From Laetmonice hystrix (lineage: Eukaryota), in contig OZ249445.1 in the NCBI GenBank assembly GCA_965235115.1, positions 5,580,001 through 5,644,000 on the forward strand: 64,000 bases of DNA, written 5' to 3'. Below, piece after piece: positions 50,907 through 63,732 of this stretch; positions within the stretch are counted from its first letter, which is position 1; the number at the start of each line of letters is the position of its first letter. The notes beneath the pieces were generated by a model. That model did no database searches. It was not told the origin of the DNA and was given only the letters and a program-made list of their open reading frames with translations. The position numbers were made by a program, and so were the translations under genes.

Positions 50907-52994
50907 ACTGTCTGATGTTATTAAATAAGTACTTTCTACCTCGTATCTACGCCCCCCCCCCCAAAAAAAAAATCCCATTCAAAATTGGGGTTAGAAGTCC
51001 CCCAATCCACCAGTCTCTTCAAAGTGTCGTATGTTTTATAGCCTTTGTTCTCTTCCTTGTTAACTTCAGGCGGTTCAGGCTTGCCCCAATAGTAAATAGA
51101 TACTGAGCCAGAGTGGGGCCACAAATACATGCACTTGACACTTTCACTGTCGAAATCATTGTAAAGTATCGATGTGTTTCATCTCGATTCTATATTTTGA
51201 ACGAGCTGGTATTAGTGTAGGACCTTGTTGATGTTGTGTCAAGCAGCGAGGTTGTTTTTGTGGTTGTGTCTCAGGTGTGTGGGGGTGAGAGTCGTCCACC
51301 CCCATAGCCCGTGGTCGTCATCACTGGGGGATCTTGTTTTTGTGGTTGTGTCTCAGGTCCCACAGTATGGGAGTCAGTCAGTCCACTATTTGCACCCGTT
51401 AGCCAGCTGCTAATTTCGATCCATGTGTATCAACCGGACCGGCCGACGGCTGAGACCACTGGCGACATTGTCATCGCTGCTTACATAGCGAGAACCTGGA
51501 ATTGCAAGCGACGTGCGAAAATGGAAAGTTTCTATAAATGTAGCTTCTATATAAACACCGCCGGCATTGTTGGAGTGTTAGGTAGAACGTGGGGGAGCGA
51601 GAGAATCTAATCTCACACTCGTTTCTATTCTGTCCTCTCGTCATACATTCGCTTGATAGGCCTATTTGTCCCCTAAAGGTGACGTCGTGCATGGGGACTC
51701 CCTCTTTACTGTTTGGTATATAATGCTGCCCAGCGGAAGTCACTCGTCGCCTTGCCATGGGGAGAGAATATTAATTTCCGAGTGCATTATGTCTAGATCT
51801 GAACACTCCAAACGCACTCTCCGCTTTTCTGGTGATATTTTGGGTTACTTGCCCCAGTTGGGTGTTTTTATCGGACACTCCGGTGTCCTTCAACAGTAAA
51901 TCAGACGACCTCGATATGTCGCTACTTGCTGCAGATGTGTATAACCGTAATTCAAATCATCAGGCTGTTCCACCTCCCAGGGTGACCAGGGAAACCCCTT
52001 TCACCCTTTCACCCACCCCTCTAGGCTGCCGGGAGTAAGGTAATACGTTGAACTGACCAAGCTGACCCCCTAAAGCAAATTCTTCCCTTAGCCCCATTAC
52101 CAAACTCCTGGATCCGCCCCGCCACCCCCAGGCTGCTAGGAGTAAGATACCCACCCCTAGTCCTGGATTGAATGTGACGAATGTGAAGTGTCTGTTTAGT
52201 ATTCTCCCATCTTCTCCTGTCGAAGGTCACGGAGGAGGTGATTCCCACGGACTTTTTCCTGAATGACGTTGCTCTGCTGGAATAATATGTGTAGGAGAGG
52301 TACAAAATGACATAGGTATATCAAACCATCAAGTACGTGTAATTGCATCAGCAGAAAGCAACAACCTTAAGGTAAAAAAAAAAAAAACTTTGGAAACTGA
52401 GCTGAAGCCATCAGATGAAAACATCAGATGAAGCCATCAGATGCCTCCTCACCTCTGACCTATTACGGGGTGTCTGAGCTGAACGTTGCAGTGACATCCT
52501 GACTTATACTGGACAATATTAGTTCATCAGTATTGAGTAAAGATCAGTATAAATACAATTATATTATGGAATATGGACCTGTTGACCTCAGTCGGGAAGT
52601 ATTAATACCGGCTGTGGTGGGGAAGGGGTTCGTGGGTGGCTGAATGGACAATTTGTCCTCGGTCAAAACGGTCGCCTGTGTTATTTCACTCCTAGTTTAT
52701 GATATATGTGTGGTGTGCCAATATATTCGATCAGGTTCATTTTGCGGAGGATTCGACAATGATTTGACATATTACATGTATTCACTTTGAACTTATAATT
52801 GAGCCAGAAAGAGTTGACTACATATATATGGAAAAGGGTTGTGTCATCTAGTTAAAACATCGTTTTGCCGCAGTCTGCGCAGCTCTGATTAAAGGGACAC
52901 TGGCGTCCGTGATCGCCAAGCGATAAGAGCTAGGTCCAGCCAACATAGGACCTTCTTAGTTTGACAATACGACATCAGGTGGCTGCGATCTTAT

Positions 52995-52999
52995 TTCTC

Positions 53000-53064
<65 letters not shown>

Positions 53065-53201
53065 GTCTCTGTCTGTCTCTCTCTGCCTCTCTCTGTGTCT
53101 GTGCCTCTCACTGGGGGCATATAATGGAGTAACATATAATATGACTATACCACATCAGGTCTCTGTCTCTGTCTCTGACTGTCTCTGTCTGTCTCTGTCT
53201 C

Positions 53202-53241
<40 letters not shown>

Positions 53242-53495
53242 CACTGGGGGCATATAATGGAGTAACATATAATATGACTATACCATANNNNNNNNNNNNN
53301 NNNNNNNNNNNNNNNNNNNNNNNNNNNNNNNNNNNNNNNNNNNNNNNNNNNNNNNNNNNNNNNNNNNNNNNNNNNNNNNNNNNNNNNNNNNNNNNNNNNN
53401 NNNNNNNNNNNNNNNNNNNNNNNNGAGTAACATATAATATGACTATACCATATCAGGTCTCTGCCTCTGTCTCTGTCTGTCTCTGTCTCTCTGTC

Positions 53496-53543
<48 letters not shown>

Positions 53544-53594
53544 CTGGGGGCATATAATGGAGTAACATATAATATGACTATACCATATCAGGTC
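52995..53594. repeat. Composite tandem repeat (CT/CTGT microsatellite plus ~54-bp unique unit) spanning an assembly gap
   Basis: Unit CCACTGGGGGCATATAATGGAGTAACATATAATATGACTATACCATATCAGGTC recurs on both sides of 136 N (53288-53423). Confidence 0.85.
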
Positions 53595-56581
53595 ATACAC
53601 AACGCCTTCTTCTGGCTATCGTCTTAACTTGTTATAACAGGAACTTTTCTACGTGGTAAAAAAAGTAGGCGTAAATAGAAGACAATCTCTAATGGGTGGA
53701 AGGTTTTGTTCTGAATGCTAGAATATGATCCTGACCAAAATGATTCAGAAAATGAGTTAAAATGTGTTCGTGCGGTGTACGGCCAGCTTAAGAGAGTATG
53801 AATAGGCCGCATTCTAAGAAGACGACTATAACTAGGTGTGGCGATAGGTAGCTGTCTATATATAACACTCTATAACAACAGTCTATTCAACACATACATT
53901 GAAGAGTAAGACGGTAACAAAACCACGTCATATTTTACAGATTGTCGATGCGACAATAAGGCCGCAGTCCTGAATTACAGATCAGCTGTAATTTACCTTC
54001 TTATAGACCTAATTAAGTCGCTCACATATGGCGCACACAGATTGGCACTTATCTAATGGATTTATGTATACCTGCCGGAGAGGATTAGGCTTAAGCTTAT
54101 CGAATAAGGGTCGGATCCACATTATGTATAAATCCTTTGGGTATTGTGTTATAAACTCGGATGGCCGGAAATGTGGAGTTGAATAGGCAAACAATGCGAA
54201 GTGTGGCGGGCCGGTGATTGCAGCCAGGACCCGTCGTGACCGCAGGGCCAGTGAGGGACGGTTCCATAGACCCGTCATGACCCGTCATGGAACATCCCCG
54301 GAGGTATCGGCTTGGCCAGGAATCTAATGTCCGGTGTATTATTGTAGGGGCGTAGAAAGGACAGGCACTCCCCCTTGTAATCAAAGGATACCCCCAAGAT
54401 TGGCTATACCGTGATCTGCTTTAAAAATCGCATAGAAGAGCGATCAGGCCAGAAATTTAAAGGGGTTTGGTGGGATGGGGATGCTCTATTATGATGGGCT
54501 GCAATTTACCTCCCAATGACTACCCAATAAACAAACCTTGGGATGCATGGGGGAAGACTCGGGCCCCTAGAGCTAGTTCTAAGGCAGCCAGGATTTGGAT
54601 TTGGAAGTTTGGTTTACGTGTTGGCATCCACCAAGCCCCCCCCCCCCCCAGCAGTAATCCCCCCGGTGTCAACCCAGAACAGGGGCGTAGAAAAGGGGGG
54701 CAGGGGCCCCCGCTTTGAAATAAGGGGGGCAGAGTCCGTTTTGCCCGCCCCCTTTGACTCAGAAAAGCATGTTGCTGTAGACCTCTACGTTCAAAGTCCA
54801 AGGAATCTAATAACGCAGAGAACTGATAAATATGGTCAGAATTATATCTCCAAATGACGGGAATTTTATCTCCAAATGATGTTTTTTCAATCTTAAAATC
54901 TTCCTGGAGAGGCCCCCGGGGGAGGCCCCCAGACCCCCGCTGTCTAAACGGCTGCCGAAGGACAGCGGTGGCGTTATAATGGCACTAAGCATCAGACGCC
55001 ACGTGCTTACAGTGGATCCCCCTGGTGCCAAGCACGAGAATCATAGGCCTAACTACTACCGCCACCTATCGGATAGTGGTTGATATGTTCACCGGCGATG
55101 ACGTCACTGACGAGTGGCTTCTCATGCTGATGACATCACTGAAAGGCGGAGCCACCAGTCCTGTCAGATTGTGGTTGATATGTTCACGGGCGACGGCGTC
55201 CCGTGCCGATAACGTCACTGAAAGGCAGCGACACCTGTCTGAAGGGGCCAGTCTGTACTGTAGACATGCGAGAAATAGACTATACTTTTGCTGTTGTGAC
55301 ACCTAGCAAGTCGCTAGGTGACACGAATACGGACATAATAAGACGTCAGCCATACCAAAGAGCCATGTATTGTTATAATGTTTGGTCATACCGTGCTGTT
55401 ACTAACGCCATCTATCGGGGTGTTCCCCAGCAGTGATGATAAGAATAAGGTACATATAAAAATCATCGTAGACAACTGCTAAAAATCACAATTTGTGATT
55501 ACATGGCGTAGTCAAGAACTGACTGATATTACAGACGGTAAAAAATACAAAGCCTGACGATTTTCTTTTCCATATTTATTACGTTTTATTGATTCCTAAA
55601 ATTAGTAAGGTTCCGTAAGGTGTGATTTCAGTTTTCAGTTTTCAAGACCTTGATGACCGAATAACCTGGGAACTTTAGTTACAGCTTTATAACCTGATTG
55701 CAATAGGCCTACCAACCTTTTTGTAAATGTATAAAACCTCCGTCGACCCGTTCTATTATAACTTTATATATGAATGAAAACCCCCTTATCCACAATCACA
55801 ATCACTTCTCTCCTCCATAATCTCTGTGCGTGAAAACCTTACATTTAACCCTTATGTTTCATCAACCTCTGCAGTTACCAAGACTCATTGTACCCTAAAA
55901 CATATTGCACTTTGTGAGTAGGCTTGACACTTTGGAAAGATAATGCTAACATTTGGCAAAGTCTCTCTTATAATGCATGAAATCATTTTTAATTAACTAG
56001 TATTGAAATTTCCTGGGCTTCATAAATTCATTTAGTGGTTTGTGCAGTAATACATGCTGCCACGTCGTGCTACACAACATACACGTCTAGATTGCACAAT
56101 AAATCCTGATGTCATAAATTAACTATTTTATCTAAATTATGTTGTGTGCAAATCTCCGTCAGCTGTGACGTGGTCGCGGACGCCGTGACGTGAGCACCCA
56201 GTTTCCATGGTGATAAGGCCTCCTATGGTGAGGCGGCGGTCAGGACACCTCGCCCGCTCCGCCCACAGCGCTCTCTGTGGCCTCCACGGGGCAGTCTCGT
56301 GTGGGCGCCCTCTGGTGACAGAACCGTTCATAGTCCTCCCCAGCCCGTCTGAGAACTTTGAGAGCTACACTGCCTGCAACAAATATTACACTGTAGGCCA
56401 TGATTTTCCCTTTACTTGTACAGAACTCTGGTGATTTATATTTCTGATACTTGTAATAAATCAATATAACAGGAGCAAATTTGACCCTGAGGTGTTCGAA
56501 TCATTTAAACTTGGCATCATGTCTGGGAAAAGATTTTGTTCCTTCCTCCAGCCTTTGAAAAACAGAATCTTTGAAGAGAAT

Positions 56582-59500
56582 TTATAATTTAGAGGGATAC
56601 ATACTTGGCATCAAAGATTCTTCATCTGCAGACTGGTCGCCGATGAGGCCAAGTTTATGGAGCTGTTGTCGGTCAGGGCTGGACAGTGGCTGCCATGGCG
56701 ACTTCTCACTGCAACAACCAGACTGAGGTGCTGCCACCTGGTAGTTATCACACGAAGTACTGTCACCAGTCGTTGCAGGGGTATCCTTCATGAGAACTGC
56801 CTTTGCCCGTCTGACGACTAGACTCTCTTCCAACTTCTCAGGTGATGTTGACCCAGAGTTGGCCCTGCAAGTGGTTTTACATGAGCCATATAAATTGTAT
56901 TCACCATTTTCATGAAACCCTGAGGTAACCGTTTCATGCCTAACGCCATCCTTATAATCAACTCTAGTGGCGAATACATTGGTTTGAATGACAGGTTGTG
57001 AGGTGTCACTCATGTCTCCGTCCACACTGTTGTCACGGTAACCAGACATGGGCAGCAGGTTCCCAAACTGATTGGTTAGGTTGGTATTCAACCAGGCATC
57101 CGGATTGGTCATTTGGAGGCTGTTTGTGTTGTATCCTGTATCCTGATTGGTCAGCTGGAGACTGGTTGTGTTATACCCTGTATCCTGATTGGTCAGCTGG
57201 AGACCCGTGGTGTTATATCCTGTGTCCTGATTGGTCAGTTGGAGGCTGGCCGTATTGTAACCGGCATCCTCTGGATAGATGACCTGTGTACTGTGAGCCA
57301 GGTGATGGGCAGAATCTGGCGGCTCACAGCTGTCCTCTATCTCAGAGTCAGTCAGATTGGAGAGACTGAACCCATCAATATGGCTGCCATTGTTGTCACC
57401 CATGCCTGCCCCACTCCTGCTGCCGAGCAGGAAACTCATACTCCGATCAGTCTCCATGTCTTTCTGAACGATGACTGGATCTAAGTCGAATGCTTTGGGT
57501 GATTCACACGCGCTGAGCTCAGGAGGGGCTGGCAACTTGAATGGTGTTGGTTTGGACCGGCGAGTTCTCCTGCTGTAGGATGCTGCAAGAAAAACAATGC
57601 TTTCGTTTCAGTCCTCCCATGAAATACTAGCCAGGCTGTATGTCTACATCTGTTATTGAAGCCACAACCCCGATTCTGGAGTTATCCACCCAGAAAAACA
57701 TGAGCTCAACAGTCTGAGCTTCATATCTCAGAGAACTCGGAACGGTTTTATTAGAGAAAAATTCACCTACAGAACAGAACAATGAAATATGATAATCATG
57801 AAGAGGCAGTGTCAAATTAAACCTCGAAATTTATCAGCTCTATGTTGCCGATCATGTTTTCCCCTAATTTCTAGCCTAGGCCAGTATTCTAAATGAGGAA
57901 GACTATCAGATTTACCTGAGGTACACTGGTCGAGGGGACTGAGGTCGAGACGTATGGGTGACACTCCGGGACTGTTGAATGGCAGGCTAGGATGACCAGA
58001 AGAAGGCGTTGCTTGGAGAGGCAGACATAACGGAGTTGTGTCACTACTACTCTTGGTGTCTGGGAAGAAAGTAGACGAAATCCATACTGTTTACATTCCC
58101 GTACATGCATGGTAACATGATAGAATAATTTCTGGATGTTTATCCAATCTGGAATTTAGCAAACTAAAATAAGCAATGCCGCAGTAGCCTAAGGATGCCT
58201 GGCCAACAGCCAAAGATCCCAGCATGAGATGTACCTCTATGACTGGAACTGTTGGTAACACAGGGGGTTTTGGCTGTTGTGATGGGGGAGAGTTCTGGCG
58301 AGGCCATCAGTTCTGGGCCTGTAGAACACCGTCTGAGGCTTGGGGTAGCAGCACCGTGAGCACTGCCCGAGTTGATCGGGCTAGAGGAGAACAACTGACC
58401 ACGGAGGGTAAAACTATCAACAGTCTGAACTTCACATCTCACAAAAACAAAGTCCCAGTAAAGGCAGCTATCTGTAAATGTTACCTATATTTTGTTTCTA
58501 CAGAATAATGAGATATGATAGTCATGAATTTCACTACAGAACAGCAAAAGACTCTGAACGGTATTATTAGAGAGAAAAGTTGGTTTTGAACTCACAGAAC
58601 TGGGCGTGTGATGTTGTGACTGAGTTGTCAGTTCTGGTGTGACACAGCGACTCACTGTCCTCGGCTCACCGACTGCCATAGATGACTTCTTCCTACTCAT
58701 GCCACAACTGGGATGTAGAGAAAAAACACTTGCACACTGCATCCAGATATATCCACCTGACAATTTTTCTAAGTTTCCTTCAGAATATCTCAATAACTTT
58801 GAACTGGAGCCATTCTCAGTCCAGGCAAGCAAGTAATTACTCGCCTAAACTTCAATTTGTACCTTTAGGCAACCATTTTTCTGAAGACCTGCAGAGAGTT
58901 TTAATACTTGCCAATAAGTCAACCAATAAGGTGAGGTTCATTGTTGTAAGCCAGCATGGATTTGATTGGACGTACCTCTGTACTCATTAATTAGTTCCCG
59001 ACCACCAGAAACACAAGCCAAGGGAACCAGCTGGTAGGTGGTCAGTGAGCAAATTGAACTGGCCTCGAGAGAAGGGGGTAACTCCAGAGGAAGTCAGTTA
59101 GGCGTGCAAATTATTAACAAATCTTATTGGTAGGGGTGCAGTCTTTTGCATGCCTTGGCACAATTTTAGGTGCGCTATGGCACGCAAGTGCAGTTGCGCA
59201 CCACAAAAAAAGAGCCCTGCATTCTCATTGCTTTGAGAATTTGTTCCAATAGTCAGTGTTTAGTATTGTCAACTTACTGCACTGGGCTTGGAGGCGAGTC
59301 ATCTTCCCCATGAAAGAATAACTTGCGGCGTAGAGAAGAGGTGCTTAAAATATCTGTGCTTCCATCATCTTTGGTTGAGTGTGTGTAATACTGACCTATA
59401 ACGGGCAGCATCAAATTTACTCACACTTTTTGTTGTCATCAAACTCACTCAGTGAACCTTTTTTTAAACAAGTAACTGTTCCTTTGTACTTTCTATAGCT

Positions 59501-61491
59501 CAATTAAAGCATTTATTACCATTTTAGAATATATTTTCTTCAAAACACAAGACTCATTACACAAGACAAATGGTGCGCTCACTTAGAATCTTGTAGAGGT
59601 CAAAGGTTACTGGCAAGGTCAGGGTCGTCTGACATCCCACTGGTAATGTGAACACAAAGATACGAATGACAACAACCAACAGTGAAACCCTGCCAAGAGA
59701 ATATTAGGCATGGACTCTCAGCAACAATAAACTTACAAACCGACTTATGTTAGGAGACAAATTTATAACAATTACTAGTGTGAGATACTATAAGTTCATG
59801 TATCACTGTTGTAATACTGTAAGCTCCATTTGTAGTCCACTGCAAAAACTGCTGACTGATTTCTTATTCTTTTCCATATCCTCAACTTATAACGATTTAC
59901 GAACAGAATATTAAATTTGGTGCACCTTAAAATTAGCTTCTTTACATGTTTGCCTCAAATCCACAGGCCATACTTCTCAATGTAAATAATATTATCATGT
60001 CCTCACCATCTTTTTTACCCTCCTCTGACTCACGGTCACTGCTGGAACTCTCTTCCTCCTTTGGCACAACTGTCCGATAATCTAGATGGTAACAAGTATT
60101 CAATAACAACTACTGCACTCAAATCAAACTCCACGATTAAATGTCTCTCTATAAACCGATACCCCAGGTCTCTAAACCCCAGATCTTGACACAGCCACTT
60201 AAAGCTGGGGGAGGGTGAAAAATTTAATTGTATGTGGTTGACACTGTGAGTAGTGTGATGGTGCCTCACCTGTCATGGAGGGTGTCGAGGGAGGGCACAG
60301 AACCCGCTTTGGTTTACCCTCCTCGGACCATGGAGACATGCCAACAAGATTCTTGGAGAAGAATTCATCAATTGCTCTCTGGGCTCGCTCTTCGATCTCT
60401 TTGTCTCTGTAATTGGAAATGGAAGCAAGATCAGTTAATGCAAAAACCTGGTCTCTGAACTCTGCATAAATTGATGAATCGTGCCTGTTATTTCCTCTGT
60501 AACCCATTCTCAGTAGATACCAATAGAAATTTAACCTTTCTGGCTGATACAATCTGTATGACTTACCTGTTGACACCAACTGGTTGACTTGGCATTTCAT
60601 CAATGTCAGCAGGTTTCATCATTGCTATGTGATCAATGGACCAGAATGGACTGCCAGCCTGAACAACCATGAACAATAGGTGAGAAATATACCACAATCT
60701 GTCTTCATACATACTGTGCTTTCAACAAATCCTCACATGATTTGTCACTTTATGCGAGAATAGATTTACAAATATGAATGCTGTATGGTGGCCTGGCCTG
60801 GCAGGACTCCAAAACATATCTACCACCTTCACTTGCCCCTTGGGCAAGCAGCAGCCACAAGCCACTTGCCTGACAGTATTTCACTTGCCACAAAATACTC
60901 GTCCAAAGACATATTTTAGTTATGATTTCAGATGATCGGAAAGTGTTTTTTTTAGCCCTGCTCTGCATAGATCTGTCTTGATGCGGACTGATATAAAATC
61001 AAACAAAGCATCAGATAACTCACGTGGTCCTTTTGAACTGGATGCCTGCCACTGAACACTCCAGGACTGAATACACAGCCCGTCATTGCCTCAGGCTCCA
61101 ACTCAAAAGGGTTGTATAGGGCGCCCCGTGGAGTTCGAAATGCTGAACCCCTCGGAGTCCAACTTGCATCACTGCGAACTCCACATGATCCCCCATTGCC
61201 AGGGGTGGCTGGACTCTGACCATGTGCAGTACCACGGGGCGTGACCCCCTGACCTCCAACCAGTCTTCGGTGAGGAGAAATCTGCATCATGTGAGGGCTC
61301 TGTAAGTTCTTGTTCACCAACTGGAGATGTTGTGGTCGAGATCTGGGTGTGTGATGGAGCTGGCTGTTAAAGTGGAGATTTCTCGCTGGCATATCGTTGA
61401 AATTGTCCCCTCCAGACGGTGGCGAAGGGATCGTCTCCATCGTCAGGCGACTCCTTGCGCTTTCCTCACTTTCTGGTGTCAACATTATCAT
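56582..61491 (-). CDS. BORA: Protein aurora borealis, 10 coding exons, ~787 aa
   Basis: Exons complement(61024..61491, 60567..60658, 60270..60406, 60007..60081, 59583..59639, 59278..59395, 58596..58707, 58235..58394, 57916..58059, 56582..57582), all GT-AG and phase-consistent (2364 nt). Bora motifs: NPFE, FWSIDHIAMMKPADID, RAQRAIDEFFSK..SPW, GCQTTLTLPVTFDL, SSLRRKLF, FSSSPI, D(T/A)GYNT. The exact start codon and two splice sites are uncertain. Confidence 0.9.
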
Positions 61492-62507: not shown

Positions 62508-63732
62508 ATGGGCGACAATAACAGTGGGAAAACCTCGACGGCGAGAGAAACTATGGAGGGTGAGTAAAGTCAAGCTCAGTTTGAGTGTATATTTGCGGTC
62601 CTGTTAGTAAATACCTTCTTATATGTATGGTGTTAATTTCAAGGTCCTACATTTAAAGCTAGTTTCACAAATCGCCACTGACTACTCGTGATGAGGAATG
62701 GCTGGGCGATAATACAGTGTTTTACGGGCGGGCCACTGTCACTGGGTGTCAAGAAGAATACTAGTGCCGTAGTGGGTTCCCTACTACATCATTAAAAGGA
62801 AGTAATGAGTTTGATTTGGGAAGTAGTGTTACAGGTAACAAGGTGCTGAAATGCTGGATGTCTGCCCACGGCTATGTTTGTGTCGGGCTGTTGGCATCCA
62901 AGAACACATATTTAGTAAAAAATGCTAGTAATAATGGTTGCATAGTGATGGGATTGTTCTTAATTAATAAATCTTTCAGGGGGCAGAACCATGTAAAGTG
63001 AATGGTACATACTGACTGGGACAATGGTTCATTCTGACCTGGACAGTGGTTCATTCCGACGTACATTTTGACAGCGGTACACTCTGACCATAATTCTGAC
63101 TAATTACTGTACGGTATCCCAACAAACTGCTTAAGTTGGGGTTAAGCCTAGGGTCAGTTTTAACTTTTATTTAAGTATCAAATTGGGTGTTAATTGGATA
63201 GTAGCATTATCCAATAGGATTGAAATTTAATGGTCACATGAACCTGCCAAATGTTCACTAAACATACACTACCGGTACCTTATCATTCAGCCTTGGTCGA
63301 GATCTCCAAGTTATTGAACACTGGCCTGGATGCTGAGACACTGGCGGTATGTGTGCGGCTTTGTGAGAATGGTGTCAACCCTGAGGCATTGGCCCTAGTA
63401 ATTCAGGAACTGAGGCGGGAAACTGCTGCCTTGCAGGTAAACGGTTTGACAGCAAACAATGCTGTGGATACTCAAGCTACTGTACAGCTCTGCCTAGTTT
63501 CCATTTTCTTCATCCTTTGATTCTTAACGGTGGCATTCAATCATTTGAAACATGATTTAATGAGGTCTGAATGCATTTTTTTTTTTTGACAATTAAAAAA
63601 TCCAGTAAATGTTGAGAGAAGTACGATCTACACATTGAACTGATGCATGGTACTACCCTTAAGACATTTTTAACTAACAAATTTTCTCTCTTTGATTTGC
63701 AGGCTGTGGAGAATGAAGATGAGAAGGCATGA
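62508..63732 (+). CDS. MZT1: Mitotic-spindle organizing protein 1 (MOZART1), 3 exons, 75 aa
   Basis: Exons 62508..62559, 63291..63436, 63703..63732 (GT-AG, phases 1/0). Product [75 protein letters not shown] matches the MOZART1 family signature. Confidence 0.95.

What the first reader, a model, noticed from the sequence alone, without database searches (positions are those of the whole stretch)
57083..57268. BORA carries four tandem copies of its beta-TrCP-type phosphodegron
Seen: a 42-bp (14-aa) in-frame repeat gives DAGYNT-ASLQLTNQ, DTGYNT-TGLQLTNQ, DTGYNT-TSLQLTNQ, DTGYNT-NSLQMTNP and a decayed DAWLNT. Established: human Bora has a single DSGYNT degron that is phosphorylated by Plk1 and bound by SCF-beta-TrCP to destroy Bora in mitosis. 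Inference: the repeat unit is centred on this degron, creating a multivalent destruction signal (three copies with phosphorylatable Thr in place of Ser, one with Ala) that could change the rate or switch-like behaviour of Bora turnover and so Aurora A/Plk1 timing; copy number may be polymorphic.
Basis: partly seen in the sequence, partly recalled or inferred. Interest (0 to 1): 0.75.

Follow-up and report, generated by a model that had tools for sequence, protein, structure and literature searches.

The report
Bora degron motif amplified fourfold
In this worm genome, the cell-cycle gene BORA carries four old, selectively maintained tandem copies of the short motif that in human Bora triggers its destruction in mitosis, which makes it a natural test of what extra degron copies do, although none of this has been tested at the bench.

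Summary
A 42-bp in-frame tandem repeat lies on the minus strand at 57268-57101, with a fifth diverged unit to 57059. It sits in the penultimate coding exon of the single-copy BORA orthologue of a lophotrochozoan, called an annelid in earlier notes.

It is not an assembly artefact. No exact repeat in the array exceeds 28 nt. Contigs from four runs of one sample match it exactly, and one run also holds a spliced contig.

The motif is positionally homologous to the validated human degron 496-DSGYNT-501.
- Thr for Ser (DTGY[QN]T) was the form in all 43 motif-bearing non-DSG (protostome-type) Bora sequences, so it is not special here.
- The "decayed" DAWLNT unit is the orthologue of an ancient second half-unit (DTGLHT-NLTNQFGSLPF).
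- Only three units keep both phospho-acceptors.

The copies are old and constrained: pS 0.59 and pN 0.095 between units, and a relative only 51% identical has the same 4+1 layout. A bivalve-like lineage expanded from 1 to 4 units independently.

Binding to beta-TrCP and multivalent action remain inference. I class this as a new variant of a known kind, of moderate interest. The scan had noted this same stretch once before (s1-310979).

The parts
57227..57268 (-). Repeat unit 1, DAGYNT-ASLQLTNQ. Ala sits at the first phospho-acceptor position, so this copy cannot be a canonical degron.
57185..57226 (-). Repeat unit 2, DTGYNT-TGLQLTNQ. Both phospho-acceptor positions are kept.
57143..57184 (-). 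Repeat unit 3, DTGYNT-TSLQLTNQ. It is identical to unit 3 of the relative P0001.
57101..57142 (-). Repeat unit 4, DTGYNT-NSLQMTNP. In the full-length alignment this unit falls in the columns of the vertebrate DSGYNT degron.
57059..57100 (-). DAWLNT-NLTNQFGN. This is the orthologue of the ancient second half-unit (DTGLHT-NLTNQFGSLPF of molluscs and annelids), here without D-T-G.
56605..57582 (-). Array-bearing exon, the penultimate coding exon of BORA. The acceptor AG is at 57584-57583 and the inferred donor GTATGT starts at 56604.
   Evidence: The read-through 'PS[KM]' ends of ORF-called relatives fit a conserved donor.
57583..57915 (-). GT-AG intron. A contig of run X4 joins 57585 to 57919 and so lacks it; the 3-nt CAG ambiguity is consistent with these intron boundaries.
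57916..58059 (-). Upstream coding exon (...LPLQATPSSGHPSLPFNSPGVSPIRLDLSPLDQCTS). The 5' boundary is approximate.
56240..56373 (-). Inferred final coding exon (SSVALKVLRRAGEDYERFC...stop). It matches the C-terminus of Lingula Bora.
60280..60423 (-). BORA_N exon (DKEIEERAQRAIDEFFSKNLVGMSPW).
61051..61491 (-). First coding exon, with a long N-terminal extension and the NPFE motif. The boundaries are approximate.

Best explanation
This is a lineage-specific, old tandem amplification, from 1 to 4 units of 42 bp (14 aa), of the Bora phosphodegron module. It is expressed and has been kept by purifying selection.

The ancestral protostome module is Q-DTGY[QN]T-xSLQxTNQ followed by a degenerate second half-unit, DTGLHT-NLTNQFGSLPF. 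Its D-[ST]-G-Y-x-T core is the positional homologue of the vertebrate DSGYNT that Plk1 phosphorylates and SCF-beta-TrCP binds.

Most likely mechanism (inferred): Plk1-type phosphorylation of both Thr residues in units 2-4 creates up to three adjacent binding sites for beta-TrCP/Slimb. That would raise the chance or avidity of capture (an allovalent array) and so tune how fast, or how sharply, Bora is destroyed at mitotic entry. Unit 1 (Ala) and the DAW half-unit cannot act this way.

Shown: the array itself, its homology to the degron, its age, its constraint, splicing of the exon, and presence of a beta-TrCP gene. Inferred: phosphorylation, beta-TrCP binding, and any effect of valency.
For: Sequence and frame are confirmed.

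Gene identity is BORA and the gene is single-copy.

Positional homology: in a full-length MAFFT alignment of 26 sequences, vertebrate Q-x-DSGYNT and protostome Q-DTGYQT share the same columns.

The human degron is validated experimentally. S497 and T501 are required, Plk1/Plx1 phosphorylates the motif, and beta-TrCP binding depends on it (PMC2287288).

The array holds the only D[STA]Gxx[ST] motifs in any minus-strand frame of the gene.

Constraint between units 1-4 (Nei-Gojobori): pS 0.59 against pN 0.095, ratio 0.16. Over the hexapeptide codons alone, pS is about 0.96 and pN 0.036.

The relative P0001 is 51% identical over the exon and has the same 4+1 layout. Identity is 83% in the array against 45% in the rest of the exon, Fisher p = 4.5e-8.

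A more distant relative, P0002, has 1+1 units between the same flanks, so the expansion postdates that split.

The same unit amplified independently in other lineages. P0143 has 4 units where its roughly 90%-identical relative P0146 has 1, and P0003 has 2.

A contig of run X4 lacks the GT-AG intron directly upstream of this exon, so the exon is transcribed and spliced.

The genome encodes beta-TrCP, with a D-domain hit of 88 bits and a typical F-box exon.
Against: No unit has the canonical Ser of D-S-G. I found no evidence, in the literature searched or from my own knowledge, that beta-TrCP accepts phospho-Thr at that position. No paper in the library mentions DTGYQT or DTGYNT.

The conserved module is longer than a degron (SLQxTNQ and LHTNLTNQFGSLPF), so it may serve another partner.

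The pS/pN values rest on 42-nt units and non-independent pairs. Gene conversion, or the similarity of units to one another, can inflate identity in the array.

The read evidence comes from one sample, which may be the assembly's own source.

No phosphorylation, binding or turnover data exist for any protostome Bora.
Confidence: 0.6

Rival explanations
1. The array is a tolerated minisatellite expansion in a disordered tail. One copy at most does the degron's work, and the extra copies are functionally neutral passengers.
For: Earlier notes on this genome describe many coding and non-coding minisatellites of about 40-55 bp that appear tolerated (s1-301079, s1-353729). Unit 1 has already lost its phospho-acceptor. 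Copy number jumps from 1 to 4 between two bivalve-like sequences that are about 90% identical, as a slippage-prone repeat would.
Against: Synonymous divergence between units is high (pS 0.59) while amino-acid change is low (pN 0.095, and 0.036 over the hexapeptide), which is not the pattern of neutral decay. The same 4+1 layout is kept in a relative whose exon is otherwise only 45% identical.
Confidence: 0.2
2. In protostomes the conserved module (QDTGYxT-SLQxTNQ-DTGLHT-NLTNQFGSLPF) is a short linear motif for a partner other than beta-TrCP, for example a kinase, phosphatase or spindle-protein docking site. On this reading the amplification multiplies that interaction, not degradation.
For: The module is conserved over about 35 aa, well beyond the six-residue degron, and most of it is absent from vertebrates. 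The canonical D-S-G is not met in any protostome sequence.
Against: The D-[ST]-G-Y-x-T core aligns with the validated vertebrate degron. Both phospho-acceptor positions are S or T in essentially all orthologues. No other degron-like motif exists in the gene. Beta-TrCP is present in the genome.
Confidence: 0.18
3. The array is an assembly artefact, and the true gene has one copy.
For: All read support comes from one sample, which may be the assembly's own source.
Against: The units differ at 5-12 of 42 nt and no exact repeat exceeds 28 nt, so 31-mer contigs resolve them. Separately assembled contigs of runs X1-X3 cover the whole stretch laid and agree exactly, as does the X4 contig over 56700-57320. 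An independent species, P0001, has the same layout.
Confidence: 0.02

Closest known systems
Human/vertebrate Bora DSGxxT phosphodegron (496-DSGYNT-501; Seki et al. 2008, PMC2287288)
   Same: It is in the same protein and at the same aligned position near the C-terminus. The core pattern is the same, Q-(x)-D-[ST]-G-Y-[NQ]-T, with two phosphorylatable residues four positions apart.
   Different: Vertebrates have exactly one copy, with Ser. Here there are four tandem copies plus an ancient half-unit, with Thr in three copies and Ala in one. Function in protostomes has not been tested.
Single-unit protostome Bora module (molluscs, Lingula, Tachypleus, most annelid-like sequences): DTGYQT-xSLQxTNQ-DTGLHT-NLTNQFGSLPF
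   Same: The sequence module, the Thr form and the 14-aa spacing between the two D-T-G motifs are the same.
   Different: Those species have one full unit. The window and P0001 have four, and the second half-unit has lost D-T-G here (DAW).
Multi-degron substrates of WD40 F-box ligases: Sic1-Cdc4 multiple suboptimal phosphodegrons; Fbw7-dimer substrates with two weak degrons (PMC3861666); Ci/Gli with several Slimb/beta-TrCP sites. The Sic1 and Ci/Gli cases are cited from general knowledge.
   Same: Several closely spaced phospho-dependent sites for one substrate receptor could give avidity or a threshold response to kinase activity.
   Different: Those sites are dispersed and differ in sequence. 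Here they are near-identical tandem copies made by DNA repeat expansion, and neither binding nor cooperativity has been shown.

Membership tests
Bora (protein aurora borealis) orthologue | BORA_N domain (Pfam PF15280) | tested here: met
   The exon at 60199-60603 (-) scores 29.8 bits, E 5.8e-07, against a cut-off of 27.
Bora (protein aurora borealis) orthologue | Collinear exon-by-exon homology to named Bora proteins, as a single-copy gene | tested here: met
   tblastn with Ridgeia, Lingula, Liolophura and P0006 Bora hits 7-8 collinear exons between 61371 and 56318. The own genome holds only one full match.
Canonical beta-TrCP phosphodegron (D-S-G-x-x-[ST]; ELM DEG_SCF_TRCP1_1, pattern from memory) | Literal D-S-G-x(2,3)-[ST] sequence | tested here: not met
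   The units read DAGYNT, DTGYNT, DTGYNT and DTGYNT, and none has Ser at position 2. I therefore do not file it as a canonical member. It is a Thr variant that is homologous to one.
Canonical beta-TrCP phosphodegron (D-S-G-x-x-[ST]; ELM DEG_SCF_TRCP1_1, pattern from memory) | Positional homology to an experimentally validated degron | tested here: met
   The full-length alignment puts the unit in the columns of vertebrate DSGYNT, and that degron is validated in PMC2287288.
Canonical beta-TrCP phosphodegron (D-S-G-x-x-[ST]; ELM DEG_SCF_TRCP1_1, pattern from memory) | Two phosphorylatable residues at positions 2 and 6, with Asp1 and Gly3 kept | tested here: met
   This is met in units 2-4. It is not met in unit 1 (Ala2) or in the DAWLNT half-unit.
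Canonical beta-TrCP phosphodegron (D-S-G-x-x-[ST]; ELM DEG_SCF_TRCP1_1, pattern from memory) | Phosphorylation by Plk1 and phospho-dependent binding to the beta-TrCP WD40 domain | not testable with these tools
   This needs kinase and binding assays.
Canonical beta-TrCP phosphodegron (D-S-G-x-x-[ST]; ELM DEG_SCF_TRCP1_1, pattern from memory) | The cognate receptor is present in the organism | tested here: met
   A Beta-TrCP_D domain hit of 88 bits lies at G000:C5:14099491, and a typical beta-TrCP F-box exon lies about 6.5 kb downstream.

The most novel reading that the evidence does not exclude
Degron copy number may be an evolvable dial for Bora turnover. On this reading, tandem amplification of the Plk1/beta-TrCP phosphodegron arose independently in an annelid lineage (1 to 4 units, old and conserved) and in a bivalve-like lineage (1 to 4 units, recent). 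It would be selectively kept because an allovalent array makes Bora destruction faster or more switch-like, perhaps suiting rapid embryonic cleavage cycles. If so, it would be a natural example of a multivalent beta-TrCP degron built by repeat expansion.
Probability: 0.3. Interest if true: 0.7.

Novelty: new variant of a known kind. Interest (0 to 1): 0.5.

Why it matters
[quoted passage not shown] How the number of degrons shapes degradation kinetics has mostly been studied with engineered or heterogeneous sites.

Here nature supplies an allelic series of the same 14-aa module: 1, 2 and 4 copies, including an Ala variant. The series occurs in orthologues of one protein, with evidence that the copies are under selection. 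That makes the valency question directly testable with peptides and reporter constructs.

The finding also shows that the Bora degron is bilaterian-wide, with a clean split between Ser in deuterostomes and Thr in protostomes. I found no paper in the library that mentions the Thr form. It raises the question of whether beta-TrCP/Slimb reads phospho-Thr at position 2.

Tried and rejected
PDB sequence search of the exon product returned only chance hits, E about 1.

The Pfam hit of the array to DUF1720 is below its cut-off (21.1 against 21.4 bits). It reflects Q/T/N-rich low complexity, so I disregarded it.

A DNA search of the own genome found a second locus 71-73% identical to the array (G000:C13, about 15.31 Mb; L002 and L003). 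It is not a BORA paralogue. It is another open frame with roughly 30 tandem NQDTGTSD-PS units that shares a word of about 20 nt.

A protein search of the own genome gave only weak low-complexity hits besides BORA itself.

Literature searches for DTGYQT, DTGYNT, DTGxxT and DTGxxS found nothing. Searches combining Bora, Slimb and degron gave no work on an invertebrate Bora degron. No paper on phospho-Thr at degron position 2 turned up either.

I did not run complex prediction. Binding depends on phosphorylation, the tool cannot use a human reference, and the worm's beta-TrCP WD40 domain is split over several exons with long introns, so no unaltered contiguous sequence was available.

DNA for P0001 could not be fetched because the sample file was too large. 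I therefore could not do a codon-level comparison between the two 4-unit species.

Copy-number polymorphism could not be assessed, because only one sample holds the sequence.

Full report
**1. What is in the sequence**

On the minus strand, 57268-57101 holds four head-to-tail 42-bp units. Tandem Repeats Finder reports period 42, 85% matches and no indels. The units are in frame and read DAGYNT-ASLQLTNQ, DTGYNT-TGLQLTNQ, DTGYNT-TSLQLTNQ and DTGYNT-NSLQMTNP. They are followed at 57100-57059 by DAWLNT-NLTNQFGN.

**2. The gene**

- The array lies in an exon running from 57582 down to 56605 on the minus strand.
- An upstream exon at 60199-60603 matches Pfam BORA_N at 29.8 bits, above the cut-off of 27.
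- tblastn with named Bora proteins (Ridgeia, Lingula, Liolophura) and with P0006 finds collinear exons from about 61371 to 56318.
- MZT1 (MOZART1 domain, E 3e-23) lies head-to-head with it at 63251-63520.
- A search of the window's whole genome finds only this one BORA.
- The array exon is the penultimate coding exon. It has an acceptor AG at 57584-57583 and a consensus donor (A|GTATGT) at 56605/56604. A short last exon at 56373-56240 encodes VALKVLRRAGEDYERFC, which matches the Lingula C-terminus.
- The 'PS[KM]' ends of ORF-called relatives are read-through of this same conserved donor.
- Earlier notes on this genome call it an annelid. I did not test that myself beyond finding that its Bora is lophotrochozoan-like.

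**3. Not an artefact, and expressed**

- The units differ from one another at 5-12 of 42 nt.
- The longest exact repeat in 57040-57300 is 28 nt, so 31-mer based contigs resolve the copy number.
- Separately assembled contigs from runs X1-X3 cover 56700-57600 with zero differences. A contig of X4 covers 56700-57320 with zero differences.
- Another X4 contig runs from 57518 to 57585 and then continues with sequence that maps exactly to 57919-57948. This joint removes a GT-AG intron at 57583-57915, with a 3-nt CAG ambiguity at the joint. The junction keeps the reading frame (G + CA = Ala). X4 therefore holds mRNA-like spliced sequence of this gene.
- Caveat: all four runs belong to one sample, which may be the assembly's source, and their library type is not on record.

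**4. Homology to the known degron**

Seki et al. 2008 (PMC2287288, read) showed the following for human Bora. It has 496-DSGYNT-501. S497 and T501 are needed for ubiquitination and for beta-TrCP binding. Plk1/Plx1 phosphorylates the motif. A non-degradable mutant delays anaphase.

I pooled the HMMER search and two of the three word-index searches and scanned 142 relatives.
- 88 carry exactly one DSG[YF]x[ST]. These are all the vertebrates, as DSGYNT or, in frogs, DSGYTT, plus the starfish Patiria.
- 43 carry DTG[YF]x[ST] and never the DSG form. The named ones are molluscs, Lingula, Tachypleus and Ridgeia.
- The remaining 11 have no strict motif. They include amphioxus and Ptychodera, which show degenerate DSGxN forms at the aligned position.
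- A third search with an alignment added 35 sequences, each with at least one DTG-type motif and 32 of them with exactly one.

A full-length MAFFT alignment of 26 sequences places vertebrate Q-x-DSGYNT and protostome Q-DTGYQT in the same columns. The repeat unit is therefore centred on the positional homologue of the validated degron. The Thr is the ancestral protostome state, not a novelty of this array.

**5. The ancestral module and what changed here**

Most molluscs and annelid-like sequences read (N/S)Q-DTGYQT-xSLQxTNQ-DTGLHT-NLTNQFGSLPF. That is one full unit plus a second D-T-G exactly 14 residues later, inside a conserved tail.

In the window, DAWLNT-NLTNQFGNLLP aligns to that second half-unit. 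It is an old element that has lost D-T-G, not a decayed fifth copy of the recent repeat. The new feature is three extra copies of the first unit.

No other D[STA]Gxx[ST] motif exists in any minus-strand frame across the gene. The array is therefore the protein's only candidate degron. Three of its units (2-4) keep both phospho-acceptors.

**6. Age and selection**

Nei-Gojobori counts between units 1-4:

| Codons compared | pS | pN | Ratio |
|---|---|---|---|
| All 14 codons | 0.59 | 0.095 | 0.16 |
| Six DxGYNT codons | about 0.96 | 0.036 | 0.04 |
| Eight linker codons | 0.32 | 0.14 | 0.44 |

By my own parsimony count on the unit codons listed, the hexapeptide codons show about 8-9 synonymous changes against one amino-acid change, the Ala of unit 1. 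With about 22% synonymous sites, that has a binomial probability of roughly 4e-5. This is hand arithmetic on the printed codons, not a tool result.

The relative P0001 (ENA assembly ERZ26222911, with a BORA_N ORF upstream) is 51% identical over the exon and has the same layout: DTGC-TS, DTGYNT, DTGYNT, DTGYIT, then DAGFHT-NLTNQFGSLLP. Identity is 58/70 (83%) in the array against 84/185 (45%) elsewhere, Fisher p = 4.5e-8.

A more distant relative, P0002, has 1+1 units between the same flanks (HPAHST...). This dates the expansion to after that split and before the split between the window's species and P0001's.

Caveats: the units are short, the pairs are not independent, units can align to one another, and gene conversion cannot be excluded.

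**7. Recurrence elsewhere**

- P0143 (JGI sample 3300045951, Pinctada-like) has four DTGYQT-TSLQSTNQ units, with pS 0.21 and pN 0.036.
- Its relative P0146, about 90% identical outside the repeat, has one unit. The two differ by an indel matching three units.
- P0003 has two units, with pS 0.81 and pN 0.03.
- The Ridgeia group has a rearranged set of 2-3 motifs.
- Among the 43 DTG-type sequences of the first scan, 35 have one strict motif, six have two, one has three and one has four.

Amplification of this module is rare but has happened more than once.

**8. Mechanism**

Shown:
- A real, transcribed and constrained array of degron-homologous units.
- A beta-TrCP gene in the same genome, with a D-domain hit of 88 bits and a typical F-box exon.

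Inferred:
- A Plk1-type kinase phosphorylates both Thr residues of units 2-4. The Gln at -2 of the first Thr fits the [D/E/N/Q]-x-[S/T] preference I recall for Plk1.
- Each doubly phosphorylated unit can dock in the beta-TrCP/Slimb WD40 pocket.
- Three adjacent sites raise capture probability or avidity, as proposed for multi-degron substrates of Cdc4/Fbw7 (general knowledge; Fbw7 dimer paper PMC3861666, listed).

Against:
- The canonical Ser is absent.
- I found no evidence that beta-TrCP accepts phospho-Thr at that position.
- The conserved module is longer than a degron, so another partner is possible.

I put about 0.6 on the degron-array reading, 0.2 on neutral passenger copies, about 0.18 on a different partner, and 0.02 on artefact.

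**9. Verdict**

This is a new variant of a known kind, a validated short linear degron multiplied by in-frame repeat expansion and then conserved. It is moderately interesting as a natural valency series, but it lacks any functional test.

Noticed in passing
L002 (G000:C13:15308743-15311873), about L002:1100-2300: A long open frame with roughly 30 tandem 13/16-aa units, (L/A)NQDTGTSD(T/A/S)PS(SSI), with DNA periods of 39 and 48 bp. It shares the word CTGACCAATCAGGACACAGG and the peptide LTNQDTG with the BORA array. It is not a BORA paralogue, and the gene is unidentified.
   Followed up: partly
window 63251-63520 (+): An MZT1 (MOZART1) exon lies head-to-head with BORA, whose first exon ends near 61491. 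From memory, the same two genes are neighbours in human, so this looks like conserved microsynteny.
   Followed up: partly
L006 (P0143) compared with P0146: Two bivalve-like Bora sequences about 90% identical outside the repeat differ by an indel matching three degron units (4 copies against 1). This is a recent copy-number change in another phylum.
   Followed up: partly
Bora orthologues in general: There is a clean phyletic split at degron position 2. Ser is found in all vertebrates and in Patiria, amphioxus and Ptychodera. Thr is found in all motif-bearing non-DSG sequences recovered. Amphioxus and Ptychodera have DSG(I/V)N variants that lack the Tyr.
   Followed up: partly
window 60952-61491 (-): The first BORA exon encodes a long N-terminal extension of more than 100 aa, rich in Pro, Arg and Ser, before the conserved NPFE motif. 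Ridgeia Bora has a similar extension, and vertebrate Bora does not.
   Followed up: no
window 52950-53630: A CT/GA-rich microsatellite block (reading SLSLSL / DRQTDRQT) flanks a run of N at about 53290-53430.
   Followed up: no
window 57295-57330 (-), peptide LTDSEIEDSCEPPDS: An acidic Ser cluster (SDSE[IV]xD) just upstream of the array is conserved in P0001 and P0003. It could be a CK2-type or priming phosphorylation site.
   Followed up: no
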